Below the pieces are notes generated by a model. The model saw only the letters and a list, made by a program, of their open reading frames with translations, had not been told where the DNA came from and made no database searches. A stretch of DNA of 64,000 bases from Macrostomum lignano (taxonomy: Eukaryota): positions 40,522 to 104,521 of the forward strand of contig NIVC01003312.1 in the NCBI GenBank assembly GCA_002269645.1, in the 5' to 3' direction. Numbering within the stretch: position 1 is the first letter of the stretch; each line of letters begins with the position of its first letter. Position numbers and translations under genes: made by a program. Positions 1 through 37,314 of the stretch are shown one piece after another.

Positions 1-510
1 AGATGTGTCACACTAGGTGTCCACAATCAGAGTGCCAGATGTGTCACACTAGGTGTCCACAATCAGAGTGCCAGATGTGTCACACTAGGTGTCCACAATC
101 AGAGTGCCAGATGTGTCACACTAGGTGTCCACAATCAGAGTGCCAGATGTGTCACACTAGGTGTCCACAATCAGAGTGCCAGATGTGTCACACTAGGTGT
201 CCACAATCAGAGTGCCAGATGTGTCACACTAGGTGTCCACAATCAGAGTGCCAGATGTGTCACACTAGGTGTCCACAATCAGAGTGCCAGATGTGTCACA
301 CTAGGTGTCCACAATCAGAGTGCCAGATGTGTCACACTAGGTGTCCACAATCAGAGTGCCAGATGTGTCACACTAGGTGTCCACAATCAGAGTGCCAGAT
401 GTGTCACACTAGGTGTCCACAATCAGAGTGCCAGATGTGTCACACTAGGTGTCCACAATCAGAGTGCCAGATGTGTCACACTAGGTGTCCACAATCAGAG
501 TGCCAGATGT
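1..510. repeat. 36-bp minisatellite (AGATGTGTCACACTAGGTGTCCACAATCAGAGTGCC), about 14 apparently identical copies, runs off the window start
   Basis: Direct reading; the ORF track shows the 12-aa repeat MCHTRCPQSECQ. Confidence 0.97.
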
Positions 511-658
511 GACGCACTGTGTGCTCTCGTTTTAGCCCGTGGTGCAGCTTTATTATTTATTCTCGCATGAGCCAAGGCAAGGGCGTAAAGGCCAGATTTT
601 GCTTATCGCTTCCTTAACCAATAAATTACCGGCATGCCCGGCTTACGCGTCTGCTCAG

Positions 659-726
659 TGATCGAGGTGAAGCTCAAGGACACTCCGCAAGATCCCGAGA
701 ACCAGTCGCGAGGCTGCTGGTGCTGA
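659..726 (+). CDS. RAB6: Terminal coding exon A of a Rab6-like GTPase (xIEVKLKDTPQDPENQSRGCWC*)
   Basis: Acceptor ...ctgctcag|, phase 1, 21 codons plus TGA. Ends in the CXC prenylation motif and resembles the Rab6 tail as I recall it (human [21 protein letters not shown]). AATAAA at 994-999. Upstream exons lie outside the window. Confidence 0.65.
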
Positions 727-1159
727 GTTGTGTCTTTTTTGGTTAACTCAACTGACTTTGAGCAATATGGATAATTTCTCGGACCTTTTCTGATGTTTTT
801 TTATCATATCCGGTTTCCTAACTGAAGCTCCTCTGGTCCCTGTTCAGTCTCTGTGATCAACAGGCTTGACCCTTGACCTTGTTTTAGTCTTGTTTTGTTT
901 CGTGTTTCTTTCTCTGTCCAATAATTTTCACTATCTTGCTTGTCTATTGTAACAAACACAGGTAACATTCCAGCCGTATAGTTGTGCTTGACTAATAAAT
1001 TTTCTTGATCTAACTCTTTTTCTATCTGAAATAATAGACAGGTTTTTAGTGTCCAACAGATGCCTTAGCAAGGCCTTGGCAATCAAAGTGTTGGCAAGTC
1101 ACTTTTACGCCTGTTTAGGGCTTATAAACCCTTTGTAATTTTGCAGGCCATTAAACTCT

Positions 1160-1550
1160 TTTGTACTTTAGCGGGCCATTAAACCCCAACTTTGTACTTT
1201 AGCGGGCCATTAAACCCCAACTTTGTACTTTAGCGGGCCATTAAACCCCAACTTTGTACTTTAGCGGGCCATTAAACCCCAACTTTGTACTTTAGCGGGC
1301 CATTAAACCCCAACTTTGTACTTTAGCGGGCCATTAAACCCCAACTTTGTACTTTAGCGGGCCATTAAACCCCAACTTTGTACTTTAGCGGGCCATTAAA
1401 CCCCAATTTTGTACTTTAGCAGGTCATTAAACCCAACTTTGTACTTTAGCGGGCTATTAAACCCCACTTTGTACTTTAGCGCTCCATTAAGCCTATCTTT
1501 GTATTTTTGTGGGTCAGTATACTCGACTGGTTTGTACTTTAGCGGGCCAG
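1160..1550. repeat. 31-bp minisatellite (ACTTTGTACTTTAGCGGGCCATTAAACCCCA)
   Basis: About 9 clean copies followed by degenerate ones. Confidence 0.93.
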
Positions 1551-1946
1551 CATGAGAGAATAAGAGAATTTCACATTAAAATAGCTTAAAAAACATTCCT
1601 TGTTTGCCAATTTCCCTTCCTAATCGCTCTGCTAAAAGCCTTAACACGCTTTGACACCTCTGTTTTGTATGCGATATTCTTTTATACTATTTGTACTATA
1701 TAATAACATATAATAACCATATTCTATTCGCATATAAATTCCCGTTGTGCCTTTATCAATATTAACGGCAATTAGCTCTACTTATTACTGGTCAGTAGGA
1801 GTAGTTTAAAATAACTTTGGTACTTTTTAATAGGTATGCAACATTAAATGTTTTCAAGTTTAATTATTGCACCCCGGATCTACTTTATCGATTTTATATC
1901 GGACTCCTTCACTCTCAATTCTGCCAATTGATTTCTGAAACGCCAG

Positions 1947-2014
1947 ACATCGAACTTCGGCCAGTCGATCCGGACGACTCTAGCGAGCAGGCCAAAGGTT
2001 ACTGCAACTGTTGA
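1947..2014 (+). CDS. Alternative terminal coding exon B of the same Rab-like gene (xIELRPVDPDDSSEQAKGYCNC*)
   Basis: Acceptor ...acgccag|, phase 1, 21 codons plus TGA (68 nt, same as exon A), ends in CXC; ATTAAA at 2094-2099. Confidence 0.55.
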
Positions 2015-2169
2015 ATTATTTTTTTGTTGCTAGCTGGCAACTGTGTTCCAGTTAATGACGGTTGGCTTGAAAAAAGATTAATTTGTTTATTATATTAAAT
2101 TTTGTATTAGCTAATTCTCTTTTGTTTATGGTTGTTAGCTAGCATCTCTGCCATTGCGTGGGTAGATTG

Positions 2170-3500
2170 TTTGATAGATACAAATATAGATGGTTGATAG
2201 ATACAAATAAAGATGGTTGATAGATACAAATATAGATGGTTGATAGATACAAATATAGATGGTTGATAGATACAAATATAGATGGTTGATGGATACAAAT
2301 ATAGATGGTTGATAGATACAAATATAGATGGTTGATAGATACAAATATAGATGGTTGATAGATACAAATATAGATGGTTGATAGATACAAATATAGATGG
2401 TTGATGGATACAAATATAGATGGTTGATAGATACAAATATAGATGGTTGATAGATACAAATATAGATGGTTGATAGATACAAATATAGATGGTTGATCGA
2501 TACAAATATAGATGGTTGATCGATACAAATATAGATGGTTGATCGATACAAATATAGATGGTTGATAGATACAAATATAGATGGTTGATCGATACAAATA
2601 TAGATGGTTGATAGATACAAATATAGATGGTTGATCGATACAAATATAGATGGTTGATAGATACAAATATAGATGGTTGATAGATACAAATATAGATGGT
2701 TGATAGATACAAATATAGATGGTTGATAGATACAAATATAGATGGTTGATAGATACAAATATAGATGGTTGATAGATACAAATATAGATGGTTGATAGAT
2801 ACAAATATAGATGGTTGATAGATACAAATATAGATGGTTGATAGATACAAATATAGATGGTTGATAGATACAAATATAGATGGTTGATAGATACAAATAT
2901 AGATGGTTGATCGATACAAATATAGATGGTTGATCGATACAAATATAGATGGTTGATCGATACAAATATAGATGGTTGATAGATACAAATATAGATGGTT
3001 GATCGATACAAATATAGATGGTTGATAGATACAAATATAGATGGTTGATCGATACAAATATAGATGGTTGATAGATACAAATATAGATGGTTGATAGATA
3101 CAAATATAGATAGTTGATAGATACAAATATAGATGGTTGATAGATACAAATATAGATGGTTGATAGATACAAATATAGATGGTTGATAGATACAAATATA
3201 GATGGTTGATAGATACAAATATAGATGGTTGATAGATACAAATATAGATGGTTGATAGATACAAATATAGATGGTTGATCGATACAAATATAGATGGTTG
3301 ATCGATACAAATATAGATGGTTGATAGATACAAATATAGATGGTTGATAGATACAAATATAGATGGTTGATAGATACAAATATAGATGGTTGATCGATAC
3401 AAATATAGATGGTTGATAGATACAAATATAGATGGTTGATAGATACAAATTTAGATGGTTGATAGATACAAATATAGATGGTTGATTGATTGATCGATAA
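2170..3500. repeat. 23-bp minisatellite (GATAGATACAAATATAGATGGTT)
   Basis: More than 50 copies; generates three spurious 430-470 aa minus-strand ORFs. Confidence 0.97.
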
Positions 3501-3949
3501 AAATATGGATGGGTTGATACATGGATGATTATGCAAACAGACCGCAATTACAAGCTAAGAAAATATTACTATTGATGTATTTCACACAACCTGTCAATGT
3601 GTGTCTGTGTTTAAGTAATTTTCTTCTCTACAAAGCCTCAGTGATATTTTTTCTGCTTTTTTATTCCTACATATTTCAATAGAATCACCTATCGCTTGCT
3701 GTCAATATAGAACAGGCCCACCATATATAGACCACTATTGTCCATGAAGCATTGAAATAAAATTATCTATATAGTCAGGAAATCGTTTGTTCTTTGATCA
3801 TTACTTAACTGTTCGTATTACCATTTTTTCTTTAAATTTTTACTTCTGTTAGACTTCTCTGTAAACTAAGGGTTACAGTGGAGATGTTACCTATCCCATG
3901 TAGACAATCCGGTCCCTCATTCTATGGTAGTCCTCATCCTATGGCTATG

Positions 3950-4900
3950 ATGGTCCTTCTCATCCTATGATGGTCCTTCTCATCCTATGATGGTCCTTCT
4001 GATTCTATGGTGGTCCTTCTCATCCTATGGTGGTCCTTCTCATCCTATGGTGGTCCTTCCATCCTATGATGGTCCTTCTCATCCTATGGTGTTTCTTCTC
4101 ATCCTATGGTGGTCCTTCTCATCCTATGGTGTTTCTTCTCATCCTATGGTGGTCCTTCCATCCTATGATGGTCCTTCCATCCTATGATGGTCCTTCTCAT
4201 CCTATGGTGGTCCTTCTCATCCTATGGTGTTTCTTCTCATCCTATGATGGTCCTTCTCATCCTATGGTGGTCCTTCTCATCCTATGATGGTCCTTCTCAT
4301 CCTATGATGGTCCTTCTCATCCTATGATGGTCCTTCTCATCCTATGATGGTCCTTCTCATCCTATGGTGGTCCTTCTCATCCTATGGTGGTCCTTCCATC
4401 CTATGATGGTCCTTCTCATCCTATGGTGTTTCTTCTCATCCTATGGTGGTCCTTCTCATCCTATGGTGTTTCTTCTCATCCTATGGTGGTCCTTCCATCC
4501 TATGATGGTCCTTCCATCCTATGATGGTCCTTCTCATCCTATGGTGGTCCTTCTCATCCTATGGTGTTTCTTCTCATCCTATGATGGTCCTTCTCATCCT
4601 ATGGTGGTCCTTCCATCCTATGATGGTCCTTCTCATCCTATGGTGTTTCTTCTCATCCTATGGTGGTCCTTCTCATCCTATGGTGTTTCTTCTCATCCTA
4701 TCGTGGTCCTTCTCATCCTATGGTGGTCCTTCCATCCTATGATGGTCCTTCTCATCCTATGGTGTTTCTTCTCATCCTATGGTGGTCCTTCTCATCCTAT
4801 GGTGTTTCTTCTCATCCTATGGTGGTCCTTCTCATCCTATGGTGGTCCTTCCATCCTATGGTGGTCCTCATCTTATGGCGGTCCTTCTTATCCTATTGTG
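3950..4900. repeat. 19-20-bp minisatellite (GGTCCTTCTCATCCTATGAT/GGT)
   Basis: Direct reading. Confidence 0.95.
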
Positions 4901-5021
4901 GTCCTTCTCATTCTATAGTGGTCCATCTCATCTAATCTTGGTCTCTCATCTTGTGATGGTCTTTACTATTTTGTGATGGTAGTTCTCATCGTCCAGTTAG
5001 AGTCCTCATCCTGATGTACAG

Positions 5022-8000
5022 GCTGCTCTTAGCCCTTCGCACCACCTGTTTATAATGCATGCAGCCATGGACAGCAGCGGATCGGCCATGGAAGCCAGCT
5101 TCATCAAATCCCAGGTGTGCGGCTGGCCCGAGCCGCGCCAGCTCGAACTGATCGTGGGCGAGCTGACCGGCACAGACCAGCCGGGCGAGCTCTGCCTGGC
5201 CCGGCTGTCCGGCCTGGCCGGTCCAGTCGGCGGCCTGCTGCGGATTCAATTGGACAGCGGCGAATGCGATGAAATCGGCGATGATGTTGGCGAGGCCGAC
5301 TTGGCCGATCGGTTGCGCCGGTTCTGCCGCTCCCGACGCGACCTTCGCCTGCTGCCGATCCTGTGCTGGCGGGACCGGCTGCCGGCTTTGGAGAGGTCGC
5401 TGGCCCGCCTGCTGGGCGGCCGGTCCGGCCCGTGGACTCCGGCTGAGGTGAGCAAGCGGCATCAGCTCCGGCGCATCCTGCCGATTGAACCGGTGGCCAC
5501 TGAGCTGTGCATCCGGTTCTGCAAGCAGCCTAAGCAGTCGGCCGCCTCAGTGGCTATGACCAACCGCCTGCTAGCTGATTTAAAGCACTGCATTGGCCAG
5601 GATCCGAATTTCTCTCATTTGGCTCTGACTGGCCGGCTGAAGAACTGTAAATTGCATCAAGGCGACTGCGCCTATTATAGATGTCAGGTGAGATAAATAC
5701 CTGTCACTGCACTCATTGATTGATTGCTCCCCGACTCTACAAATGCTGAGTGGCCCTCCCATGGTTACTGAGAATAACTTCTGATAGTACCCTAATCCCT
5801 ACTGAGAATCGCCCCCTAATCCCTACTGAGGATCGCCCCCTAATCCCTACTGAGAATCGCCCCTAATCCCTACTTAGAATCGCCCCCTTATTCCTGACAA
5901 TTTGAGAATCGTCCCTAATCCCTAATGAGAATCGTCCCTTAATCCCTACTGAGAATCGCCCCTAATCCCTACTGAGAATCGCCCCTAATCCCTACTTAGA
6001 ATCGCCCCCTTATTCCTGACAATTTGAGAATCGTCCCTAATCCCTACTGAGAATCGCCCCTAATCCCTACTGAGAATCGCCCCTAATCCCTACTGAGAAT
6101 CGCCCCTAATCCCTACTGAGAATCGCCCTAATCCCTACTAAGAATCCCCCCCTAATCCCTACTGAGAATCGCTCCCTAATAAGAATCGCCCCCTAATCCC
6201 TACTGAGAATCGTCTCCTAATCCCTACTGAGAATCGCCTTCCTAATCCCTACTTAGAATCACCCCTAATCCCTACTGAGAATCGTCTCCTAATTCCTACT
6301 GAGAATCGTCTCCTAATCCCTACTGAAAATCGTCCCCTAATCCCTACTGAGAATCGCCCCCTAATCCCTACTGAGAATCGCCCCCTAATCCATACTGAGA
6401 ATCGCCCCCTAATCCCTACTGAGAATCGCCCCCTAATCCATACTGAGAATCGCCCCCTAATCCATACTGAGAATCGCCCCCTAATCCCTACTGAGAATCG
6501 CCCCTAATCCCTACTGAGAATCGTCCCTAATCCCTACTGAGAATCGTCCCCTAATCCCTACTGAGAATCGCCCCTAATCCCTACTGAGAATCGCCCCTAA
6601 TCCCTACTGAGAATCGCCCCTAATCCCTACTAAGAATCGCCCCCTAATCCCTACTGAGAATCGCCCCTAATCCCTACTGAGAATCGCCCCTAATCCCTAC
6701 TTAGAATCGCCCCCTTATTCCTGACAATTTGAGAATCGTCCCTAATCCCTACTGAGAATCGCCCCTAATCCCTACTGAGAATCGCCCCTAATCCCTACTA
6801 AGAATCGCCCTAATCCCTACTGAGAATCGCTCCTTAATAAGAATCGCCCCCTAATCCCTACTGAGAATCGCCCCCTAATCCCTACTGAGAATCGCTCCCT
6901 AATAAGAATCGCCCCCTAATCCCTACTGAGAATCGCCCCTAATCCCTACTTAGAATCGCCCCCTTATTCCTGACAATTTGAGAATCGTCCCTAATCCCTA
7001 CTGAGAATCGCCCCTAATCCCTACTGAGAATCGCCCCTAATCCCTACTGAGAATCGCCCTAATCCCTACTAAGAATCGCCCCCTAATCCCTACTGAGAAT
7101 CGCTCCCTAATAAGAATCGCCCCCTAATCCCTACTGAGAATCGTCTCCTAATCCCTACTGAGAATCGCCTTCCTAATCCCTACTTAGAATCACCCCTAAT
7201 CCCTACTGAGAATCGTCTCCTAATTCCTACTGAGAATCGTCTCCTAATCCCTACTGAAAATCGTCCCCTAATCCCTACTGAGAATCGCCCCCTAATCCCT
7301 ACTGAGAATCGCCCCCTAATCCATACTGAGAATCGCCCCCTAATCCCTACTGAGAATCGCCCCCTAATCCATACTGAGAATCGCCCCCTAATCCCTACTG
7401 AGAATCGCCCCTAATCCCTACTGAGAATCGCCCCCTAATCCCTACTGAAAATCGTCCCCTAATCCCTACTGAGAATCGCCCCCTAATCCCTACTGAGAAT
7501 CGTCCCCTAATCCCTACTGAGAATCGCCCCTAATCCCTACTGAGAATCGTCCCCTAATCCCTACTGAGAATCGTCCCCTAATCCCTACTGAGAATCGTCC
7601 CCTAATCCCTACTGAGAATCGCCCCTAATCCCTACTGAGAATCGCCCAATAATACCTACAGAGAATCGCGCCTCCTCTCACTGTTTTCGTACTGACCATT
7701 CGTGCTACTACCAGTAGTGAATGCATTTATTCCTTTACACAATCCTCTCGCAGCTGATGGCCAGCGCCATATTTGATGCATTCCGTGATGTCGTCCCGCC
7801 GCCGCCGCCGCCCAACTGCGCCACCGCTGCCGCCGTAGCAGCGGACTCCAACAGTAGAGCGGTCGCGAGTTCGAATCCTGTCGTTTCTAACAGCGAGAAC
7901 GACAGCTCAGAGACCGAAGCTGAATCAGTTTGCACGCCGTTCCCCCGTCCGGAGGAGATGCCAGCTCCAGACCTGCTTCTCATGGCCGGTTTCTGTCCCG

Positions 8001-8191
8001 ACGCCGACTCTGACGGCCCGCCGCTGATGCCGCCGCCGGCGCTTCAGCAGCAGCCAAAGTCTCGCGTTCCGCCAATCGTAGACGTCAGTTCTCTCGGGTC
8101 TGCACTCGTCGCCTGTCGGGATATTCGACTGGGCGATCCGAATTTTGTTAATGACGACAGACCTGACAGGCCCTATGTGCATAATAACTGA
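5022..8191 (+). CDS. Unidentified protein, last two exons (5022-5687 and 7754-8191); 5' exons not located
   Basis: GC-rich open frames; acceptor gtacag| at 5021, donor cag|gtgag at 5688, acceptor ctcgcag| at 7753; all phase 0 and in frame with the 213-aa and 156-aa ORFs. Pro-rich low-complexity C-terminus. Confidence 0.65.
5790..7650. repeat. 22-25-bp intronic minisatellite (CTAATCCCTACTGAGAATCGCCC[C]) with higher-order structure
   Basis: Variant units recur about 930 bp apart. Confidence 0.95.
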
Positions 8192-8249
8192 TAGATGTTG
8201 GCTCGCGTTCAGTGCCTGACCATATAGCCCATTGGATTCGGAGTTAATT

Positions 8250-8810
8250 TAAGAATCGCCCCTTCTGCCCCCTCTAGAATTCCCCTTCTGCCTCCTCTAG
8301 AATCCCCCCTTCTGCCTCCTATAGAATTCCCCCTTCTGCCCCTTCTAGAATTCCCCCTTCTATCCCCTCTAAAATCGCCCCTTCTGCCCCTCTAGAATTC
8401 CCCCTTCTGCCCCTTCTAGAATTCCTCCTTCTGCCCCTTCTAGAATTCCCCCTTCTGCCCCCTCTAGAATTCCCCCTTCTGCCCCTTCTAGAATTCCCCC
8501 TTCTATCCCCTCTAGAATCGCCCCTTCTGCCCCTCTAGAATTTCCCCTTCTATCCCCTCTAGAATCGGCCCTTCTGCCCCTCTAGAATCGCCCCTTCTGC
8601 CCCCTCTAGAATTCCCCCTTCTATCCCCTCTAGAATTCCCCCTTCTATCCCCTCTAGAATCGCCCCTTCTGCCCCTCTAGAATTTCCCCTTCTATCCCCT
8701 CTAGAATCGGCCCTTCTGCCCCTCTAGAATCGCCCCTTCTGCCCCCTCTAGAATTTCCCCTTCTATCCCCTCTAGAATTGCCCCTTGTGTCCCCTCTAGA
8801 ATCGCCCCTG
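8250..8810. repeat. 22-24-bp minisatellite (CTAGAATTCCCCCTTCTGCCCCT / CTAGAATCGCCCCTTCTGCCCCT)
   Basis: Direct reading. Confidence 0.93.
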
Positions 8811-9384
8811 CCCCTATAGGATCGGCCCCTCTTGCCCATTCTATTGTACAATCACTCTGGAACCATAGAAAGTCACTTCCCAAATAGGTTAATATTTATC
8901 TGTATTTACTAAAAGCCAATTTCAATCTGTCACCTCTCTGTCCTCGGATTCCCGAACCAAGATCAGTTTTGTCGTGGCCTATCTGGCAATCGTAAAACTC
9001 CATACGCTACTTATCTTATATATGCAAATCACGACTTTCTTATCTGGCCATCTGTCTGCCTGTTTTTTTTAAGCGGTTCGTTGAAAAACGATTTTTTGTA
9101 CAAACTTGTGCTACTATGGGCCACTCTACTGTGAGTTTACTATTGCTGCTCAAACTGGGGAGATTCACTAAGTCCTACCGTTGGTTTATGTTTTTGCCCG
9201 TGTTTAAATTTTTATTGATCTCAAACTGTTACCTAACATAATATCGTGTGCCAATGCAAGTTTACATATGTGTTTGCAACCTACTGGTTTTACCGGTTTT
9301 AAAATCTGCTTTTTGTTAACACGCAGCGCCTCCTGTTTCTCGCTTCTCCTTTATTTACTGATCTCCCTCCTGTAGCTCGTATTT

Positions 9385-10195
9385 TTGTCACTCTCCCTGT
9401 GTCACTCTCTCCCTCCATGTGTCACTCTCCCTCCCTGTGTCACTTTCCCTCCCTGTGTCACTCCAGCTCCCTGTGTCACTCTCCCCCTCCATGTGTCACT
9501 CCAGCTCCCTGTGTCACTCTCTCGCTCCCTGTGTCACTCTCCCTCCCTGTGTCACTCCAGCTCCCTGTGTCACTCCAGCTCCCTGTGTCACTCCCTCCCT
9601 GTGTCACTCCAGCTCCCTGTGTCACTCTCCCTCCCTGTGTCACACCAGCTCCCTGTGTCACTCTCCCTCCCTGTGTCACTCTCCCTCCCTGTGTCACACC
9701 AGCTCCCTGTGTCACTCTCCCTCCCTGTGTCACTCTCCCTCCCTGTGTCACTCTCCCTCCCTGTGTCACACCAGCTCCCTGTGTCACTCTCCCTCCCTGT
9801 GTCACTCTCCCTCCCTGTGTCACTCTCCCTCTCTGTGTCACACCAGCTCCCTGTGTCACTCCAGCTCCCTGTGTCACTCTCTCCCTCCCTGTGTCACTCC
9901 AGCTCCCTGTGTCACTCTCTCCCTCCCTGTGTCACTCCAGCTCCCTGTGTCACTCTCTCCTTCCATGTGTCACTCTCCCTCCCTGTGTCACTCCAGCTCC
10001 CTGTGTCACTCTCTCCCTCCATGTGTCACCCTCTCCCTTCACGTGTCGCTCTCTCCCTCCCTGGGTCACTCTAGTTCCTTCCCTGTGTCACTCCAGCTCC
10101 CTCCATGTGTCACTCCAGCTCCCTCCATGTGTCACTCCAGCTCCCTCCATGTGTCACTCTTTCCCTCTTTTGTGTCACTCCAGCTCCCTCCATGT
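9385..10195. repeat. 18-20-bp pyrimidine-rich minisatellite (CTCCCTGTGTCACTCCAG / CTCCCTGTGTCACTCTCC)
   Basis: Direct reading; four spurious ORFs. Confidence 0.95.
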
Positions 10196-10419
10196 GTCGC
10201 ATCCTTTGCCATTGCCTTTCCTTATGATTTAGTTTTTACTTTGCCCATGCATGTTGATACGTGTCTTATTAACTCGTGTTTGCAAAATGTTATTTTATGA
10301 AACTGCATTAAAGAACTAAAACGTGCAAGGCACTGCAAGCGCTCATAGATTGTAATAGTAATATTAAATCAGCTGCTAATCTATCTTTTGTTATAAAACA
10401 TATTTGCATTTAAACCTGT

Positions 10420-10986
10420 CCTGTAGGCTGCAGTTGTGCGTGTCGCATCTTGCGTAGTTTTTTATGAATAATCTTGAGCTTAAGCGGATGTACTTTATAC
10501 CGTGACAAGACCGTGACACCGTCACCGTGACAAGAATCGCTAAAGAGTCATTGCAATTTTGCAAACAGCTCATAAATGACCCTAGCAACTATGGGGCGAC
10601 TCTTTAACGACTCAAACGACTGCAATGCGACGGAGAGGCGACTGTTGAGTCGCAAGCGCATCATGTAAGTTGCAGAATCGTTAAAGAGTCGCGCAAAAAA
10701 GGTTGTTCAAGAGTCGTTATTTTAGCGTTATTATAAATGCGAAATGCAATTCTAATTCATAGAGTGACGCAGATGCGCTTTCGATGCAGCTCAGTGATTC
10801 TACAGTAACTCTGGCACGCCTCAATTTGACTCTTAGGCAACTCTTTGACGAATTTTTGGCGACTTGTACCGTGACATCTTGTCGGTTTTAAGTCGTTTAA
10901 GAGTCACTTCTTTTCTATTTTACCTGTGTTACCTGCAACGACTCTGGGTCAACACAAGTGACTCTGGGACGCTTCTTGACCCATGG
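10420..10986. mobile_element. Non-coding dispersed repeat, MITE-like, rich in GACTC/GAGTC motifs; longer copy
   Basis: Two segments (from 10531 and from 10911) are similar to 28796-28950. Termini uncertain. Confidence 0.45.
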
Positions 10987-13455
10987 ACGGCTCCCATGAT
11001 GTGCTTCCTGTTAATTGATGGTGGGCGGGAGCTGTGAGCAGCAGGATATGACAGCACTAATTAATCGTAATGTTATTAACCTTAATAATCAATATACAGG
11101 CCTTGCATATAAAGCTTTACTGTTTGTCTGCACTGTTGCTAATAATGAATTTGTGCCTCGCGCTTTCACGGCTTAGTTGATCATCGGGGACTGGGCCGCT
11201 GGGCTGGTTGGCAAAAGCTGGCGAGTCGAGGAGGCGACAATCGACCCGCAGCCATTCCGCTGACGCCCTGAGCTAGCACACGGATAACAGTGGGTTTCTC
11301 ATGGTTAGTTAGTTGCAATCTCTGTACCTCGGTGGTTGGCTCGCCGCTCTTCTCATGAACCGAAAGATTCAGGTGAATTTTCGTGCACACGTGTATTGAA
11401 AGAGATTGATTTTACTTTGCACTCCTAAATCGTGCAAATATCGCTGCGAAATGCAATGGCGAGATAGGAAGATCAAATGCAATAATTGATTGGGATGAAA
11501 AACTTGATAACTTTAATAACCGAGGCGGCAGTGTTTAATTGCAGGAGTGAGAAAAGGTGCTCGCTTGAGAGCTAGGCTGACAAAATTTGCGCGTGGGGTG
11601 GCGGTTGAATACAATACCATACAAATCTCTAAGCCGGTCAATAACAATCGCCAGTGCTAGTGAGTCAACACTTTAGTGCATGCAACCTATAGCAGAGTTC
11701 ATCATGTCACTATGTCACAAAAACAAATATTTTTTTCTTATCGCCGCACTGTATTTTTATTCGAGGAAATAGGCCTTCAAAAAAGCTACACGATCTTTAA
11801 GTTTCACGTCCTGTTATACTACAGTGGTACTTGCGTCCATAGCTATAGCTAATGCGATGCAATTTCCTTGATGATAGAACACTTCGCCAACAGTACAAGC
11901 GAGCTATCATCACTCAGATTGGCGGGGGAACTCCGAAAGAGGCGATGCAGTGGGAATCATTAGCAGGCCTGACTGCATGCAGCCGCAGTTTTGATTGGGA
12001 AGGCCGCATAGCGACAGCCGGGCAAAGCCTTGAACAAGAAGATTGAGCGTGCGAGCGACCAGTCTTAAAAGAGAATTTATGAATAGAGTGAACAGGAAAA
12101 GGAAACGCGAGAGAGCATAGGAACGAGAAGGAGAAAGAGGCGCATTGAGAACACGGGATGGCGACGGGGGGAATAATGCGTGTGAGAGTGAAGGCATGGC
12201 AGCTGCGATGAGAGTTACCTTATGCTTACTATTACTGGGGAAGCTGCGCCCCTCATCTGCCTATCTATATCAATCCCTGTTTAATCCACCCCAATCTGTG
12301 TCCTCTGGGCATGCAGTGCAGAGCCGAAAATTGCATTAATCCGCAACACAATGTGTGCCCGCCGCGCCCGCACACAGGGGGAGAGGAACGGCTCGGTCGA
12401 CTCAGCTCCTCGTCTATACTTAGTCTCTCCCCACTCCCACGCTGCCTCCGCGTGTCTCTTCAGAAGTTCGAAGGCCCCGCCCCGAGTATCCCCCAGCTCA
12501 GAACGCGGGGAGGGTCGAGGTTGCATCCGCAGCAGCAAATCTCCTGGCCCTTTAGTCTGGATCTCCTGGCCTCAAGCTTCGCTGTCTCCTTGCTTCTTTT
12601 GAGACTTTGCGACAAGAAATTGGAGTGCTGGGAGAGAGGGAGATGCTAAAGCCGCGAGTCGGGGCGCGCTGTCGCTCCGTTTGAGCTCCGCAGCCCGAGC
12701 TGCAGTTCCCTCGCCCCCAATCAGTGCCTACGGGCTGTGCTGGTCGCCAAGGCCCGCCACCTCGTTCCTTCTTCCTTCCTTCAGCGCTTCAACTCTCCCT
12801 CTGCTCTCTCCCTCCGCCCGCGGTTTCTCTACTTCCCAACTTCCTTCTCCCGATCCGATGCCTCTAATACCGTCACTGCCGCGGGTGACACACGAGCTTC
12901 TGCGGCGCTGCTTCGCCGGCCACCCAAACTGAAAGAAGAAAAGAATTAGGGGGGGGGGGAGATGCGATAGGACGGCGCGGGGGACGGCCCTGTGTGCCGG
13001 CATAAACGGCATCGAGGGAAGAGAAGGGAAGCAGGGAAAGGGGGCAGCACACAGTGTGGCGGCTGAGCATATATAAGGTAGCTCTGGAGGCTCCCAGCCA
13101 GCGCTTCCAAAAAAGTAACCACCCCACACTTACCTCGCGTGCGATTCCACATCCTCGTGCAGAGAGAGAGAGAAGCGCCTGTCCCTCCTCTTACACGGAA
13201 CGCGTATTGGAACTCAACTACAGTCGAGGCGTACACGATCGAAGAGTATCAGATTGACGAACTGGGCGGTGAGCGATTGAGTGCACTTCTGCGTAGATTA
13301 GTGAAGAAGCAATAACTGTCAGTAGATTAAATAGCAGCACCCACCCATTGATAGACTGATCAGCAACCTAAGCAATCGAGTTAAAAAAAATCGAACAATT
13401 AGAGGAATTGAAATTGCAGCTTCGTTACTCAGCCAGCCAGCCAGCCACTCACTCA

Positions 13456-17300: not shown

Positions 17301-18132
17301 TCACATCATGCACACCACACCTGTCACATCATGCACACCACACCTGTCACATCTAAACATCTTAAATCCGCAGCCGTGCCGTCCGGCATTTTGCCCTGTC
17401 TGGTGACCCCTGACGGCCGCAAGCTCGTCCAGTCGGCAGCCATCGCCCGGTTCCTAGCCGTCCGGGCTGGCATCTACCCGGCCGGCGAGGCCGAGCAGTG
17501 CAAATGCGACGAGTTGATTGCCCTGGTGCAGTGCGACCTCATGGCCGCCTACGAGCAGTTCCTGCCGCTGCGGCCGCAGGAGGAGCGCCGGCGCGGCTAC
17601 GACAACTGGAACGAGAAGGCCGCGCCAAGGATTCTGGGCTATTTGGACGGCATTCTGGCTGACAGCCAGTCGGGCTACCTCATCGGGGACGAGGCAAGCA
17701 GATGCTTTGCACTTTTAGTTTTGAAGAAATCGACTCGCACTTGGAGTTTCCTTGCTAGTAGGGACTTCAAAAGTACCAGCTAGAAATTTACTTAGGAGTT
17801 CCCTGCGAGAGTAAAAATAGATCTGTATTGGGGATTTCCCTCGACCTTGATTTGGGATTCCCCCTGCGCACGTAGAGCACAAAAATAGATCTCTTCTGTA
17901 TAGGCATTTCCCTGCGCACATACGCAAAAGTAGCTTGAACTACCCGCAGCTGACAGTCGCCGACCTGCTAGTAGCAGCGGTCGTGGACTCCCTGTCGCAG
18001 ATCCCAGAGGTCCGAGCGTCGGCCCAGTCCAGGAAGCACCTGACCGCCCACCTGGCCAAGCTGCGCCAGCAGGAGAAGCTGGCCGCCTATTTGAAGTCGC
18101 GAGACGACTCATTTCCCGGCTTTAACGTGTGA
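14302..18132 (+). CDS. GST: Glutathione S-transferase, sigma-class-like, 212 aa; exons 14302-14437, 17374-17693, 17950-18132
   Basis: YKLIYF..R.RAE N-terminus, KPT|VPSGILPCL...DGRKLVQSAAIARFLA, GDE|LTVADL. Phases 1 and 0; total 639 nt; intron 2 has a GC donor. Confidence 0.92.
14445..15200. repeat. Composite intronic minisatellite (core TGTACACTCGGATAG; 23-27-bp units and a longer composite unit)
   Basis: Starts within a few bases of the GST intron 1 donor. Confidence 0.93.
15670..16020. repeat. 17-19-bp minisatellite (CTCACTGAGTCGCCCCC)
   Basis: Direct reading. Confidence 0.93.
16995..17352. repeat. 23-bp minisatellite (CCTGTCACATCATCCACACCTCA)
   Basis: Ends about 20 nt before the GST exon 2 acceptor. 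Confidence 0.93.
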
Positions 18133-18588: not shown

Positions 18589-19564
18589 TAATAATAATAA
18601 TAATAATAATAATAGTTACGCCCCACGCCAGCCACAGAAGTGGCCAAAAGGGGGGAGCGTCAAATCGCGCGTTTCAGAGCCAGGTCTTTAATGTGCTTCA
18701 CACCTCGGTTGAGCCTCGCCATCAGGTCCGCTAGCGCGGCGGTGTTAGCGTTCTGGCGTGGCGACACAAACGGGCAGCGCTCGGACCGCGGTGCCACGGC
18801 GTTGAGGTCACCAAGCACCACCACAGTGTCGCGGTGCGCCACCAACTCGAGCTGCTCGGACAGGAGCTCGAAGAACTCCTGTGCCTCCTGCTGATGGGCA
18901 GCCGTGGGAGCGTACGCATAGAACAGCCGCGCATTGCAGCGGCGCAGCCTCACGTCCACGCGCAGCAGTCTGGCTGACAAGCTGACGCAGCAGACGCTCT
19001 CGCCTAGCCGTGGTCCGACGAGCGCGCCGACTCCTCCGCGGCCTCTGCTGTCCGCTGACGTGTAGTGCAGCGTCCAGCCGGCCCCCAGGTCTTCACGGTG
19101 AAGTCCAGACTCAGCAGTGATTGACAACTCCTGCAGCATGACGAGGTCTAGCCGCAGGTCAGATGCCAGCAGTGCGAGCATGCCCCTTCTCCAGGCGGAC
19201 TTCAGTGTTCGGCAGTTAAAGGTGGCTAGTCTTAGAGCGCGGTTTGTAAAGGCTGGGGCCCGGTGTTGGTGGGCCTCACGGTCCCCGGCGCCACCCGGCG
19301 GAGCCGACTGGACGGGGATCGGCGGGTCAGAGTTGACTGACGAAGGCGGCCTTTCGTTCGTCCTCGCCGGTTGCGTTCCCTTCGCCGCTCAATGCGACGT
19401 CGGGCGCTTCGCTGTCCACGCCGTCCTCCTGTCCTGCCGCACTTAGCAGCCGCAGCACCAGGGCGCGGCTCTCCATGTTGGCCGAGGCAAGCGCTGGGGG
19501 CTCCAGCGTCACCAGGAGGCAGCGGCATTTATTTGCATCAGGGTGCAGATTAATTTAATTTATT
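18589..19564 (-). mobile_element. Internally deleted RTE-like non-LTR retrotransposon: 5' region, N-terminal part of the APE endonuclease, 3' end with (TAT)n tail; no RT
   Basis: In-frame motifs LRLATFNCRTL (about 19235-19203), LQE, GGVG, YAYAPT, LGDLNA; (ATA)n at 18589-18614; candidate TSD TGAGGTGTCAA at 18578-18588 and 19565-19575. Confidence 0.8.
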
Positions 19565-19860: not shown

Positions 19861-20219
19861 CTGGCGGTTGGATGTGTCAAACGGATATTAGATGCACGAA
19901 GAGGTTCAAAAAAGACATTAAAACACCCGGTTGTTCGAAAAGCTTGCAAACATTAGCCACCAGAGAGAAAGGTCGCTAGAATTCGTCAACAACCAATCAG
20001 AATCCATTCGAATTCAGTTCCGAATTTCGCGTGTTTTTTAGCGGCGAAGCGAGTTTCAATGGGAAGGGAGGTCGCTGACTTTGTTTTGTGTCGCCAGACT
20101 TCATTATATTGATTATTGCATACGGGTTTAAAATCACTGCAACAAAGGTAAATTTGTCTTTAAGTATGGCATAACTTACAGTATCACAGTGGTGAAGAAT
20201 GTCTCTCTCTCTATAGTAG

Positions 20220-21042: not shown

Positions 21043-24000
21043 ATGGTAAAAATGCCATTGATCTGCATCTTGGCAGCTACGTTCGGCGTCGCCATTGCAA
21101 TGAGTTCGGCTTCGGGAGCTTCAGCTGGCGCAGGCTCGGCACGAAGACCCCTGTGCGAAGCTCCCGCAATCGGGTACGCGAGCGTGACAATCAACTCCGT
21201 CTTTCTTCGGAAAGACGCTAGAGAAATAATGGTCCCTCGGGTTCACATTGAATTTATGGTTTCTGTGAAATTGGCCCTTATTCACACTCTATATTCACAC
21301 TCCATATTCACACCCCATATTCCCACTCCATATTCAAATCCCATATTCACACCCATTATTCACACATATTCAATGGTTCTAGGTCACGGCCAAACCTAAA
21401 AAGTCTAAGCTCTGTGGTCAGCAAAATTTCCGACAAAATTTCGGTCTTTAAGATGTTTCCAATAATTATCCCCAAACAAAACTAGAAGTTCGAGCTCGAG
21501 AGACAGCTTGCTTCCCTCCGTCCGAGTGAACACGACAGACCGACTGGCGTCTCTGCGACGCTGGATGGCGCATCGCGGAATCCACTGGTACCTGGAGACC
21601 GGCCGGGACTCCAGCCTGCTGAGAAGGACCGAACCAGCTGATCAGTTTCTGCGCTGGCTAAGCGGCTTCTCCGGCTCCAGCGGTGCGTGGTCTGGACTCG
21701 AGTCTCGGGGCGCTCGGACTCCGGGTCTCGGGACGCTTGGACTCCGGGTTGGACTCGGGATTAGGGAGGCTTGGACTCGGGATTAGAAAGGCTTGGACTC
21801 GGGATTAGAAAGGCTTGGACGCGGGATTAAGGAGCCTTGGACTCGGGTCTCGGGATGCTTGGACCCAGGAATTGGGATGATTAGAGATTTGGATAAAATC
21901 TGATAGCAGCAACGGACGAATTTTCTGCAGCTAAAAAAGCTGAGCTTGACGTTCACGCGCTGGTAGCGGTGTTTACCGGCTGTCTGCAACACAGGCGCCG
22001 CTCATCGTCAATCAATCAAGTCGGCTTGCTGAAACTCGCAAAGTGGCCCTCATTCACTGCCTAATTTGTCACTTCGGCAGTGCCTGTCACCCCTTCCCCT
22101 CCCAGTTGCGAGCCGGGGGTATTAGCCTTGACATTCGCCTAATCGCTTTAATTGCCCGAAGGGGAGCCGGTGCTGAAGCACGAAAACAGATGGCCGGTGC
22201 AAGACCGCACTTGTGGCCTATCAACACTTTCTGGGTAATAAAAGTTTCACTTTGCACTGTTCGAAACCCGTGTAAGTTTGGCATTTCGTGAATGTCAATA
22301 TCGTTGATTTGTCGATTTGAAGAAATTCTGAGCGCTACAGCGAATTTCAGCAGCAAATTTTACGATCTTGTCGTTTCGTCCGATGTTAGACCCGGAAAAG
22401 CTTAACTATAAAATTGTATTATTGTAGATCGGCAACTCTTAAAATGCAGATTAGCACAGATTCGCTTTTGCGTTGAATTGGGTTTTAGCGGAGACGAATC
22501 TAATTTATAATAACAATAATAATTGATTACACCAGTATGTGCAACCGACAGCTCAGCCGCAGCTATTGCGCGGCGCATCTGAAGGCTGCGTACGGCTGTT
22601 CAGTCCAAGGACTGGTCGCCACGCATACCCGCAATTACCCCAGCTAATGCTGGCACCCATTTTACAGCTGGGTGAACTGAAGCAATGCAGAGTTAAGACA
22701 CTTAAGTGTCTTGCTCAAGGACACAAATTGTTCCGGGTGGGTCGAGAATCAGTCTTGAGTCCGACGCTCTAACCACTAGGCCACAACCCTATAGTGTTTA
22801 GAAAAATACACTGTCACAAAGTGAATAGGAACAACTGAAAATTAATAGAAGCTTTCACGTCCTTATTGCGCTGGCTCACTTCAAAGTAATATTGTGGTAA
22901 GTTGCGCGTCTGGTTAATAGTAAAATTAAGGATGTGAGCACTAGCATTTTTGGTAAGCGCCTCGCGTCAGCCTTTGCCCTGTTTCTCCGGTTGCATTTTT
23001 CAAGACAACACACATGCAACCTGCTCTCTTTGTGATTCGGAATCTTATACGGTAAGTTATTCACGAACTATCCGATGCTTCCGCAGGTGAGGCTCTGATT
23101 TCGCACAGCTGGGCTCGCCTGTTCACTGACAGTCGGTACGCGGTGCAGGCGGACTCCGAGCTCGACTGCTCAAACTGGCAGCTGAGCACGGACCAAACAG
23201 TCCAGGACTGGATCTCAGAGTACTCTGGGCCGATCGTCACTCTGGCCTTCGACTCCAGCCGCATACCCTGGACCGACTGTCCCAACGCCGACTCCCAACG
23301 CCTGAAGCTGCTCGCCCTGCTGCCTGGCCAACCGGCCGACATTCTGTGGACGTCTGGCCGGCCGCAGCGTCAGCGGCGCACCGTCTACCCGCTGGCCAGT
23401 CGGTACACCGGCGGCATCTCCTGGCGGGAGAAGGTGGCCTCCGCCCGGCTGGCCATGGCAGCGAGAGGAGCCGCCGCTCTGTCCGTCACGGCCCTGGACG
23501 AGGTCGCCTACCTGCTGAACCTGCGCGCTACCGTGGTGGCCGGCCAGCCCTACTTCCGAGGCGTCGTACTGCTGCTGCGGAACTCCACCAGCCCGATTGT
23601 GTTTCTGGACAGTGGCGTCCTTGCCAACCCGGCCGTTCGGCGCCACCTTCAAGGAGCCACTGTGCGCGACCTGTCTGAGCTGGCAGCATTCGCCGACTCG
23701 GCGAAGTTTGGTGGCAGCTCCGCGAATCGCCTCTGGGTCTCCAGAGTGCACGCGTCTCTCGCAACCGTGGCGACTCTTCTGGGCCCGTCGACAGACCCGC
23801 TGAACCGTTCGGCCGTGGAGAACGTCATCCCGTATCGCACCCCGATTTATTATGCCAAGTCGGTCAAATTCACTTTAGAGCGCGTTGAGTTCGCCGCCTG
23901 CAGCCTGCTAGACTCGGCCGCTCTGGTGGCAGCGCTGAGCGACCTCGAACGGCTGGTGGCCGCTCGCCAGCCGGTAACGGAGCTGTCGGTTGCCAGTTTA

Positions 24001-36900: not shown

Positions 36901-37314
36901 ATGTGAAGTGCCAATATTGAAGATGTGCGAGGCTCAGAAGTTTTAAGACGCCATGGAAAGTGTAAAGTGCAATTACAACAGCGAATATTTAATTTTTGAC
37001 AGTCTGGCTCGCACAACTGGTACATTTTTAGGCCACATGTGCAACTCAGTCGCTAGCAATTATGACAGTCTTGGACAACCGCGGGAACTGGAGTGAGATC
37101 GTGCATGCTCAAACCCCAGCCTATAGCTACTGCTAGCTAGATAGGCAAATATGATTGGCCTCGGCATAGAAATGGGAATACGCGGCTCACAATGTATATT
37201 GAGCCATGCCAGTTATTTAGACTGAATTCTGTGCGCCTTCGTACTGATCTCTCTGGCAACTTGACTTTACTTCTGTTGACTTCTGGCCTCTCTAGAAAGC
37301 AATTAGCAGGGATC

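What the first reader, a model, noticed from the sequence alone, without database searches (positions are those of the whole stretch)
659..2014. Two tandem, equal-length, CXC-ending alternative last exons for a Rab6-like GTPase
Seen: two separate 68-nt segments (659-726, 1947-2014). Each follows a CAG acceptor in phase 1, encodes 21 residues starting IE, ends C-x-C-stop (GCWC, YCNC) and has its own downstream poly(A)-type hexamer. Neither is called as such in the ORF track. Established: CXC is the Rab geranylgeranylation motif, and the hypervariable tail contributes to Rab membrane targeting; the known vertebrate Rab6A/A' switch is an internal exon, not the tail. Inference: one Rab GTPase core can be spliced to either of two prenylated tails, a tail-switching mechanism made by terminal exon duplication.
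Basis: partly seen in the sequence, partly recalled or inferred. Interest (0 to 1): 0.75.

Follow-up and report, generated by a model that had tools for sequence, protein, structure and literature searches.

The report
Two alternative tail exons of flatworm Rab6
The Rab6 gene of the flatworm Macrostomum lignano ends in its normal lipid-anchor exon, followed 1.2 kb downstream by an intact, unannotated second copy that could give the same GTPase a different membrane tail; insects, ticks and nematodes have the same layout, but use of the second exon in this flatworm is not yet shown.

Summary
The window is the last 64 kb of Macrostomum lignano contig NIVC01003312.1.

- **Rab core found.** It has seven GT-AG exons, and exon 7 ends in phase 1 (T|GTATCC).
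- **Exon A (659-726).** This is the real last exon. It matches GenBank PAA52036.1 exactly, and a spliced transcript of a related Macrostomum species joins exon 7 to position 659.
- **Exon B (1947-2014).** It is unannotated. From the same donor it would give a 209-aa Rab6 ending ...DNDYIELRPVDPDDSSEQAKGYCNC.
- **B is neither chance nor a decayed relic.** It ranks second after A among 1,674 stop-terminated 21-mers in the window. It is a sharp GC island. It keeps the acceptor, frame, length, a hydrophobic-x-hydrophobic motif and CXC-stop at only 41% nucleotide identity to A; neutral decay keeps these in about 8e-5 of runs.
- **Same layout elsewhere.** A second phase-1 CXC exon follows the canonical one in a butterfly, a tick and a filarial nematode. 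Deposited protein models from Lepidoptera, Chironomus and Brugia use it.

No RNA or protein evidence for B exists in M. lignano itself. Verdict: probably a real alternative last exon (about 0.7), and a new member of the CDC42/KRAS tail-switching kind.

The parts
1..658 (+). 3' part of the last intron (intron 7) of Rab6. The intron starts off-window at L001 11518. This part holds a 36-bp minisatellite (1-518, 14.4 copies).
   Evidence: Window 1 = L001 12701 at 100% identity. Exon map. Tandem repeat.
656..658 (+). CAG acceptor of exon 8A.
   Evidence: The junction is used in the spliced Macrostomum transcript L004 (L004 635|636 aligns to L001 11517|13359).
659..726 (+). Exon 8A, the canonical last coding exon of Rab6 (BOX15_Mlig021079g2). 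Phase 1: T+TG = Leu, then IEVKLKDTPQDPENQSRGCWC and stop.
   Evidence: Exact C-terminus of PAA52036.1/P0123 and of P0241-P0243. Profile of non-Macrostomum Rab6 tails: 22 bits, E = 1.4e-5. Highest GC in the region, 0.60. Assembled CDS verified.
727..1010 (+). Inferred 3' UTR of the A isoform, with AATAAA at 994-999. The end point is not determined.
   Evidence: Hexamer position. The extent is inference only. The 3' UTR of the related-species transcript L004 does not align.
1131..1549 (.). 31-bp minisatellite (13.6 copies) between the two terminal exons. Copy number differs among the three M. lignano loci.
1944..1946 (+). CAG acceptor of candidate exon 8B. A TTGAT branch-point-like motif lies 15-19 nt upstream.
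   Evidence: The context gccag| resembles the other acceptors of the same gene (ctgcag, ccgcag, ctcag). The branch-point reading is inference.
1947..2014 (+). Candidate exon 8B, an unannotated alternative last coding exon. Phase 1: T+AC = Tyr, then IELRPVDPDDSSEQAKGYCNC and stop.
   Evidence: GC island of 0.54 against flanks of 0.2-0.38. Identical in the loci L002 and L003. Neutral decay test 8e-5. No ATG in the 69-codon open frame, so it is not an independent ORF.
2094..2099 (+). ATTAAA hexamer 80 nt after the stop of 8B. A possible poly(A) signal for the B isoform.
   Evidence: Weak evidence, because such hexamers occur 1.8 per kb on this strand.
2163..3490 (.). 23-bp minisatellite (57.7 copies) that bounds the locus downstream.

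Best explanation
The window starts inside the last intron of the Macrostomum lignano Rab6 gene (GenBank BOX15_Mlig021079g2, contig NIVC01003312.1).

Shown:
- Seven upstream exons encode the GTPase core.
- Exon 7 ends ...AAC GAC T|GTATCC, in phase 1.
- This donor is spliced to 659-726 (exon 8A), giving the canonical Rab6 tail ...DNDLIEVKLKDTPQDPENQSRGCWC.

Proposed (inferred):
- The same donor can instead skip 8A and its poly(A) site and join 1947-2014 (exon 8B). This would give a 209-aa Rab6 with the same core and the tail ...DNDYIELRPVDPDDSSEQAKGYCNC.
- Both tails keep the two elements needed by the Rab escort protein and Rab geranylgeranyl transferase: a hydrophobic-x-hydrophobic CIM motif (IEV in A, IEL in B) and a terminal CXC. 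Both isoforms should therefore be doubly geranylgeranylated.
- The tails differ in the 15 residues between those elements. B is more acidic and has prolines in different places.
- In yeast Rab6 the stretch around the CIM binds the Rgp1 subunit of the Ric1-Rgp1 exchange factor and affects activation and Golgi localisation (PMC11618376). The switch would therefore most likely tune activation, GDI handling or membrane targeting, not lipidation chemistry.
- 8B arose by duplication of the terminal exon. Whether this happened within flatworms or much earlier is open.
For: - **Locus identity.** The window is 100% identical to NIVC01003312.1.
- **Gene model.** The 8-exon GT-AG model gives a 630-nt CDS with either last exon, and the A model contains PAA52036.1 exactly.
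- **Junction to A.** All junctions, including exon 7 to window 659, are confirmed by a spliced Logan transcript of a related Macrostomum species.
- **B is not chance.** Rank, pattern and shuffle tests are.
- **B is not neutral.** At 41% identity to A, substitution-only decay keeps AG + open frame + CXC-stop in 8e-5 of 400,000 runs. Indels, which are frequent in the local alignment, are not even counted.
- **Exon-like composition.** B is a GC island.
- **Preserved in paralogues.** B is present without change in all three M. lignano loci.
- **Same arrangement in three other phyla**:
  - Pararge aegeria: canonical exon 20039-20106, second exon 27271-27341.
  - Haemaphysalis longicornis: 21933-22000 and 25023-25090.
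  - Cercopithifilaria johnstoni: 11223-11293 and 12689-12759.
  - All second exons are in phase 1 and 68-71 nt long. Their non-CXC residues score in the top 0.01-1.1% of random peptides, while three other pattern hits score at 16-72%.
- **Second tails are used in deposited models**:
  - Chrysodeixis and Heliothis proteins end ...PPEDTVDLQTQSPMGSEQEG..GCVC, which is the Pararge second exon read from the same donor (A+CT = Thr).
  - The Chironomus protein ends ...TVDLQTQ...GGCMC.
  - Brugia and Elaeophora models contain PVIEIGPIKPRKIETEEGSCWC, identical to the Cercopithifilaria exon.
- **Role of the tail.** The function of the Rab6 hypervariable domain and CIM is described in PMC11618376.
Against: - No transcript or protein with the B tail is known for M. 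lignano or any Macrostomum. None appears among the 6 members of the M. lignano Rab6 cluster, among the top 120 of 1,201 Rab6 hits to a query that contained tail B, or among 1.84 billion cluster representatives.
- GenBank annotators ended all three gene copies at exon A.
- The related-species transcript L004 assembled straight through to tail A without a branch. A is therefore at least the dominant form there.
- A local profile search with canonical Rab6 tails did not pick up B.
- The acceptor of B has a weak polypyrimidine tract.
- The three M. lignano loci differ by only about 1%, so identity of B among them proves nothing.
- B is closer to its own neighbour A (z = 4.1) than to the second tails of other phyla (mean z = 2.3). 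The cross-phylum parallel may therefore be convergence, not shared ancestry.
- The insect and nematode proteins are gene models. I could not check their RNA support.
Confidence: 0.7

Rival explanations
1. Exon B is a silent relic. A terminal-exon duplicate (or the last piece of a lost tandem Rab6 copy) is no longer spliced into any mRNA and only looks intact.
For: - No B-tailed product was found in any collection searched.
- All three gene copies are annotated as ending at A.
- The transcript L004 runs into A.
- B has a weak polypyrimidine tract.
- B is not detected by a local profile of Rab6 tails.
Against: - At 41% nucleotide identity, a neutral copy keeps acceptor, frame and CXC-stop in only about 8e-5 of simulations, before counting indels.
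- B keeps exactly 68 nt and the IE[VL] motif, and it forms a GC island in AT-rich flanks.
- Equivalent second exons in insects and filariae are conserved at 20-22 of 22 residues across families and are used in protein models.
Confidence: 0.22
2. Exon B is a chance open frame that happens to end in C-x-C-stop after an AG.
For: - C-x-C-stop frames do occur by chance: 9 others in the window.
- Three non-Rab-like hits to the strict pattern occur in about 246 kb of strand length.
- Further non-Rab-like hits lie in the tick and Gongylonema loci.
Against: - The joint requirement is roughly 2e-5: same strand within 2 kb (about 0.05), AG at the exact phase-1 position (about 0.06), and non-CXC residues in the top 0.6% of Rab6-tail likeness.
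- A versus B scores z = 4.1 without the cysteines.
- The chance hits score at 16-72% on the same matrix.
Confidence: 0.03
3. B is used, but downstream of a shortened exon A and not instead of it, as in the deposited Brugia pahangi and Elaeophora elaphi models. Those models leave the canonical exon through an internal donor just before its CXC and continue into the second exon.
For: P0261 and P0264 read ...QVQMQES|DPVIEIGPIKPRKIETEEGSCWC. Gene finders, and perhaps transcripts, therefore chain the two exons in filariae.
Against: - In M. lignano exon A has only three GT dinucleotides (667, 705, 720). They leave phases 0, 2 and 2, and B needs phase 1, so none gives the CXC frame of B.
- The filarial models may themselves be artefacts of predictors that cannot model alternative last exons.
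Confidence: 0.03

Closest known systems
CDC42 alternative last exons (ubiquitous exon 7 form ending CVLL versus brain exon 6 form ending CCIF)
   Same: One small-GTPase core and two alternative 3'-terminal coding exons. Each exon encodes only the short C-terminal tail with its own lipidation motif and stop, and the choice is made by splicing. Basis: my own knowledge; the papers are listed in PMC9714508.
   Different: CDC42 is a Rho-family protein with CaaX chemistry, and its two tails receive different lipids (prenyl versus prenyl plus palmitoyl). Here both tails end in CXC and should receive the same double geranylgeranylation, so the difference lies in the hypervariable linker. Use of the second exon is not yet shown here.
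KRAS4A / KRAS4B alternative fourth exons
   Same: Alternative C-terminal exons give one GTPase two membrane-targeting hypervariable regions, and the pair is conserved over long evolutionary time (abstracts of PMC9663995 and PMC12309726).
   Different: The KRAS exon also encodes the end of the G domain. Exon 4A is a cassette whose stop turns exon 4B into UTR. The tails differ in their second membrane signal (palmitate versus polybasic). KRAS belongs to the Ras family, not the Rab family.
Vertebrate RAB6A / RAB6A' mutually exclusive exons
   Same: Same gene family, and again a duplicated exon used alternatively.
   Different: The duplicated exon is internal and changes three residues of the G domain, while the tail is shared. 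PMC9714508 lists two RAB6A transcripts, both encoding 208 aa. The rest is my own knowledge.
Second terminal Rab6 exon of insects, ticks and filarial nematodes (database models, no paper found)
   Same: - Same position: 1.4-7 kb downstream of the canonical last exon, on the same strand.
- Same phase 1 after the conserved ...D|GTAT donor, and a length of 68-71 nt.
- A hydrophobic-x-hydrophobic start, an acidic middle and a CXC-stop end.
- Used in deposited proteins CAH0592825.1, A0A2A4K9E0, CAH1728711.1 and VDN81195.1.
   Different: Sequence orthology with the flatworm exon B is not established. The M. lignano exon is unannotated and has no product on record.

Membership tests
Rab6 subfamily GTPase gene | A Ras-type GTPase core encoded upstream on the same strand and joined to the tail exon. 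| tested here: met
   L001 exons 1-7, GT-AG throughout. The CDS contains PAA52036.1 exactly. The product carries Pfam PF00071. The junction to window 659 is seen in the spliced transcript L004.
Rab6 subfamily GTPase gene | A tail that matches the conserved Rab6 hypervariable tail. | tested here: met
   Exon A scores 22 bits, E = 1.4e-5, against a profile of 72 non-Macrostomum Rab6 tails, and it is the top 21-mer of the window. It shares 15 of 22 residues with the coral Stylophora tail (counted by eye). Exon B is not found by the local profile. It ranks second among stop-terminated 21-mers and in the top 0.6% without CXC, so for B alone this feature is inconclusive.
Rab prenylation substrate (REP / Rab geranylgeranyl transferase) | A C-terminal CXC (or CC) motif plus an upstream hydrophobic-x-hydrophobic CIM motif. 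| tested here: met
   Read from the sequence: A has IEV...CWC and B has IEL...CNC. The CIM and its role in Rab6 are as described in PMC11618376. Actual prenylation is not testable here.
Alternative-last-exon tail switch of small GTPases (CDC42 / KRAS type) | Two terminal coding exons, each with its own acceptor, open frame, lipidation motif and stop, both compatible in phase with one upstream donor. | tested here: met
   The donor T|GTATCC is at L001 11517|11518. Both exons are in phase 1. Both assembled CDSs are 630 nt.
Alternative-last-exon tail switch of small GTPases (CDC42 / KRAS type) | Both splice junctions and both 3' ends observed in RNA. | not testable with these tools
   The junction to A is supported. 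No RNA data for M. lignano were reachable. Protein collections hold no B-tailed product. The full-length A isoform used as a control was also absent, so this absence is weak evidence.
Alternative-last-exon tail switch of small GTPases (CDC42 / KRAS type) | A separate poly(A) signal after each terminal exon. | tested here: inconclusive
   AATAAA lies at 994 and ATTAAA at 2094, but such hexamers occur 1.8 per kb on this strand.
Alternative-last-exon tail switch of small GTPases (CDC42 / KRAS type) | The isoforms differ in lipidation, localisation or partner binding. | not testable with these tools
   Both tails are CXC by sequence. A functional difference is inferred only from the role of the Rab6 hypervariable domain in Rgp1 binding (PMC11618376).
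Invertebrate Rab6 second-tail exon (Lepidoptera, Chironomus, tick, filariae) | A second phase-1 CXC exon of 68-71 nt downstream of the canonical last exon on the same strand. | tested here: met
Invertebrate Rab6 second-tail exon (Lepidoptera, Chironomus, tick, filariae) | Sequence orthology of the second tail across phyla. | tested here: inconclusive
   B versus second tails gives mean z = 2.3. B versus canonical tails gives 1.7. B versus its own exon A gives 4.1.

The most novel reading that the evidence does not exclude
The pair of alternative Rab6 tail exons is not a flatworm oddity. It is an old, protostome-wide (perhaps bilaterian) feature that has gone undescribed. In this reading:
- The ancestral Rab6 gene already carried two terminal exons after the conserved phase-1 ...D|GTAT donor.
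- Lineages then kept both (flatworm, Lepidoptera, Chironomus, tick, filariae) or fixed one. Strongylid nematodes and Romanomermis carry only a second-type tail in the proteins seen here.
- The switch changes how the Rab6 tail engages Rgp1, GDI or effectors in different tissues.
Probability: 0.3. Interest if true: 0.65.

Novelty: new member of a known kind. Interest (0 to 1): 0.45.

Why it matters
Rab6 is the central Golgi Rab. Its tail was recently shown to bind its own activator, Ric1-Rgp1, and to matter for activation and localisation (PMC11618376).

A natural splice switch that swaps just that tail, while keeping the CIM and the CXC, would be a ready-made experiment of nature on what the Rab6 hypervariable domain does. 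It would also extend tail switching, known for CDC42 and KRAS, to a core Rab.

M. lignano can be made transgenic, so the two tails can be compared directly in vivo. On the practical side, the three M. lignano Rab6 gene models are incomplete. Gene models in other invertebrates pick one tail or the other, or chain them, which points to a systematic annotation gap.

I found no paper that describes alternative Rab6 tails. The library searched is limited to open-access papers and preprints.

Tried and rejected
Searches that failed or were uninformative:
- The two tails joined into one query found no candidate. This was a false negative of the word index, because P0123 carries tail A exactly. It says nothing about B.
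- Exact look-ups of ten hypothetical full-length and partial B isoforms were negative. The full-length A control was also negative, so the result is uninformative.
- The 30-aa window frame ending in B gave 0 hits among 1.84 billion representatives. A 21-aa match is near the detection limit, and full-length isoforms would be hidden inside Rab6 clusters.
- Comparing the three M. lignano loci for selection has no power. Only 15 substitutions occur in about 1.6 kb, and none falls in either exon.
- A local HMM of canonical tails finds A but not B. I replaced it with an anchored position matrix.

Other loci:
- Gongylonema locus L007: no second exon in the 2.8 kb left on the contig, which holds 503 N.
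- An intron-poor eukaryote (L009/L010) has no last intron and no second exon.
- Cnidarian and vertebrate control loci could not be retrieved. Whether vertebrates or cnidarians have a second exon is therefore untested.

Readings considered and rejected:
- B as an independent small ORF is rejected, because the 69-codon open frame has no ATG.
- B chained to a shortened exon A is rejected for M. lignano, because it would be out of frame.
- The bacterial promoter and terminator scan is irrelevant for a eukaryotic locus.
Full report
**Observation.** Both segments are exactly as described.
- A CAG at 656-658 precedes 659-726, which reads TG + IEVKLKDTPQDPENQSRGCWC + TGA.
- A CAG at 1944-1946 precedes 1947-2014, which reads AC + IELRPVDPDDSSEQAKGYCNC + TGA.
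- Both are 68 nt and in phase 1. They share 28/68 nt and 6/21 aa.
- AATAAA lies 268 nt after the first stop and ATTAAA 80 nt after the second. Such hexamers occur 1.8 times per kb on this strand, so they add little.

**Where the window comes from.**
- The window is eukaryotic and full of minisatellites.
- An aminopeptidase P reading frame at 23143-24894 has its best named match in Macrostomum lignano.
- A search with a Rab6 core fragment joined to each tail returned M. lignano protein PAA52036.1 (P0123), which ends in tail A exactly.
- Its locus L001 (GCA_002269645.1, contig NIVC01003312.1) is 100% identical to window 1-10726, with window 1 = L001 12701.
- The window is therefore the last 64,000 bases of that contig (record 40522-104521).

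**The gene.** L001 supplies the 12.7 kb upstream of the window.
- It holds seven GT-AG exons of a Rab6 core, in L001 coordinates: 3949-4018, 9999-10057, 10148-10201, 10283-10388, 10481-10592, 11272-11365 and 11451-11517.
- Exon 7 ends ...AAC GAC T|GTATCC, in phase 1.
- Joined to 659-726, the split codon is TTG (Leu). The 630-nt CDS gives a 209-aa Rab6 that contains PAA52036.1 exactly.
- Joined to 1947-2014, the split codon is TAC (Tyr). The CDS is again 630 nt and ends ...KQDNDYIELRPVDPDDSSEQAKGYCNC.
- A 1,115-nt Logan transcript contig from SRR30276804 (L004) comes from another Macrostomum species, with CDS pieces 77-88% identical. It aligns exon by exon and places the last junction at L001 11517|13359, which is window 659.
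- Exon A is thus the real, annotated, transcript-supported last exon.

**Is exon B real sequence signal?**
- C-x-C-stop occurs 11 times in six frames of the window. Five have at least 21 open codons, and two of those are A and B.
- The strict pattern AG + 2 nt + 20-23 codons ending CXC + stop finds A, B and one poly-Cys frame on the other strand.
- On a position matrix from 72 Rab6 tails of other organisms, B is second after A among 1,674 stop-terminated 21-mers. Without the cysteines it is in the top 0.6% of all 53,632 stop-free 21-mers.
- A versus B without the cysteines scores z = 4.1.
- A local profile search did not find B, so B is a strongly diverged relative.
- The open frame upstream of B has no ATG. 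The 1.2 kb between A and B holds only UTR-like sequence and a 31-bp minisatellite, so B cannot belong to a separate gene.

**Is exon B maintained?**
- The two GC maxima of the region are exon A (0.60) and exon B (0.54, against flanks of 0.2-0.38).
- If B descends from an A-like exon, 41% identity means about 1.16 substitutions per site. In 400,000 substitution-only simulations, acceptor, open frame and CXC-stop all survived in 8e-5. Indels, which are frequent in the local alignment, would lower this further, yet B keeps exactly 68 nt.
- B also keeps I-E-L where A has I-E-V. This hydrophobic-x-hydrophobic element is the CIM motif needed for Rab prenylation. In yeast Rab6 it lies in the stretch bound by the Rgp1 arrestin domain (PMC11618376).
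- The two other M. lignano loci (L002, L003) carry both exons unchanged. Background divergence is only about 1%, so this has no power.

**The same layout elsewhere.** I scanned Rab6 loci that could be retrieved.
- Second phase-1 CXC exons lie downstream of the canonical one in three species:
  - Pararge aegeria: 20039-20106 HEVILRQAPGDSKEPDAGCAC, then 27271-27341 VDLQTQSPMGSEQEGNESGCVC.
  - Haemaphysalis longicornis: 21933-22000 VDVDLKDGPTETPRPEGGCAC, then 25023-25090 VPLKPQEPPKVMKDEEGGCIC.
  - Cercopithifilaria johnstoni: 11223-11293 QEVKLSDAPIRQVQMQESGCWC, then 12689-12759 PVIEIGPIKPRKIETEEGSCWC.
- Their non-CXC residues score in the top 1.1%, 0.01% and 0.02% of random peptides of their loci. 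Three other pattern hits score at 16-72%.
- The donor is of the same kind in Pararge and the filaria as in M. lignano...GAC A|GTATCC in Pararge and ...GAT A|GTATGT in the filaria.
- Cluster members show that these second tails are used in deposited proteins:
  - Chrysodeixis includens CAH0592825.1 and Heliothis virescens A0A2A4K9E0 end ...KPPEDTVDLQTQSPMGSEQEG..GCVC. The Chrysodeixis tail is identical to the Pararge exon read from the shared donor (A+CT = Thr).
  - Other Lepidoptera models with the same core end in the canonical tail.
  - Chironomus riparius CAH1728711.1 ends ...TVDLQTQQTSTNDQNQDSEGGCMC.
  - Brugia pahangi VDN81195.1 and an Elaeophora model contain the filarial second exon unchanged. 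They enter it from an internal donor of the first exon.
- Identity of 20-22 of 22 residues across insect families and across filarial genera shows purifying selection on those exons.
- Not every locus has a second exon. None was found in the short, gapped Gongylonema contig or in an intron-poor eukaryote that lacks the last intron.
- B is closer to its own exon A than to any foreign second tail. An ancient origin versus repeated duplication therefore remains open.

**What is missing.** I could reach no RNA evidence for M. lignano.
- No protein with tail B is in the M. lignano Rab6 cluster, among the top 120 Rab6 hits, or among 1.84 billion representatives.
- These negatives are weak. The word index missed even tail A. 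The full-length A isoform is itself absent from the collection. Isoforms more than 90% identical are folded into one cluster.
- L004 ran into tail A without a branch, which suggests that A is the major form.

**Mechanism proposed.**
- One donor (exon 7, phase 1) is paired with either of two acceptors.
- Use of 8A with its poly(A) site gives the canonical tail. Skipping 8A gives the B tail.
- Chaining A to B is out of frame in this species, so the two exons are mutually exclusive.
- Both products keep the CIM and CXC and should be doubly geranylgeranylated.
- They differ in the residues around and after the CIM, which is the part of Rab6 that contacts Rgp1 and influences activation and localisation.
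- Shown: the gene, the donor, exon A and its junction, and the intact state of B. Inferred: splicing into B, its 3' end, prenylation and any functional difference.

**Comparison and novelty.**
- The closest known systems are the alternative last exons of CDC42 and the alternative fourth exons of KRAS, which give one GTPase two lipidated tails. Vertebrate RAB6A/A' differs by an internal exon instead.
- Four literature searches found no description of alternative Rab6 tails.
- The insect and nematode second tails exist only as database models.
- I rate this a new member of a known kind. Confidence is about 0.7 that B is a working alternative last exon, 0.22 that it is an unused relic, and about 0.03 each for chance and for chained use.

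Noticed in passing
L001 8706-8890 (intron 1 of Rab6, upstream of the window): A 185-nt copy, 98.4% identical, of exon 5 with both of its splice sites sits in intron 1. If spliced in, this 112-nt exon copy would shift the frame. It is a recent local duplication or an assembly artefact.
   Followed up: partly
window 1-518, 1131-1549, 2163-3490, and further arrays up to about 10160: The Rab6 3' region is packed with minisatellites of 36, 31, 23, 20, 24 and 18 bp. The 31-bp array between exons A and B differs by two to three units among the three M. lignano loci.
   Followed up: partly
window 1947-2041, frame +1 relative to exon B: Read in phase 0, exon B and the next 27 nt stay open and end ...VELFFCC-stop, which is a CC-type ending. 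An 8-nt piece of exon A (659-666, followed by GTGAAG) would deliver that phase. This is probably a coincidence.
   Followed up: no
L006 11223-12759; proteins P0261 and P0264: Deposited Brugia pahangi and Elaeophora elaphi Rab6 models chain the canonical last exon, cut at an internal G|GTTGT donor before its CXC, to the second exon. This is either a third isoform type or a gene-finder artefact.
   Followed up: partly
proteins P0236, P0268, P0160 and P0212: Strongylid nematodes, Romanomermis and an unnamed eukaryote carry Rab6 tails of a second type (IVNMDPIKQRQIV..GSCWC, IVNVRPEDKP..GGCWC), not the canonical xEVxLKDxP type. The filarial second exon shares 13 of 22 residues with the strongylid tail (counted by eye).
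   Followed up: partly
window 40296-44384 (- strand): An intact 1,362-aa Ty3/gypsy-type retrotransposon polyprotein is present, with PNMA-like gag, aspartyl protease, reverse transcriptase, RNase H and integrase.
   Followed up: partly
window 17331-64000: Neighbouring genes, by Pfam:
- Weak GST-like (17331-17783, +) and endonuclease/exonuclease/phosphatase (18660-19181, -) fragments.
- Aminopeptidase P, with 583 aa in one exon (23143-24894, +).
- A CitMHS / P-protein-like transporter (about 26380-32167, +).
- A rhodopsin-type GPCR (37192-38745, +).
- An axonemal dynein heavy chain that runs off the end (about 56600-64000, +).
   Followed up: partly
The word-index protein search reported no candidate for a query that contained tail A. 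The database nevertheless holds P0123 with that exact 21-residue tail. Short-query negatives from that tool should not be trusted.
   Followed up: yes
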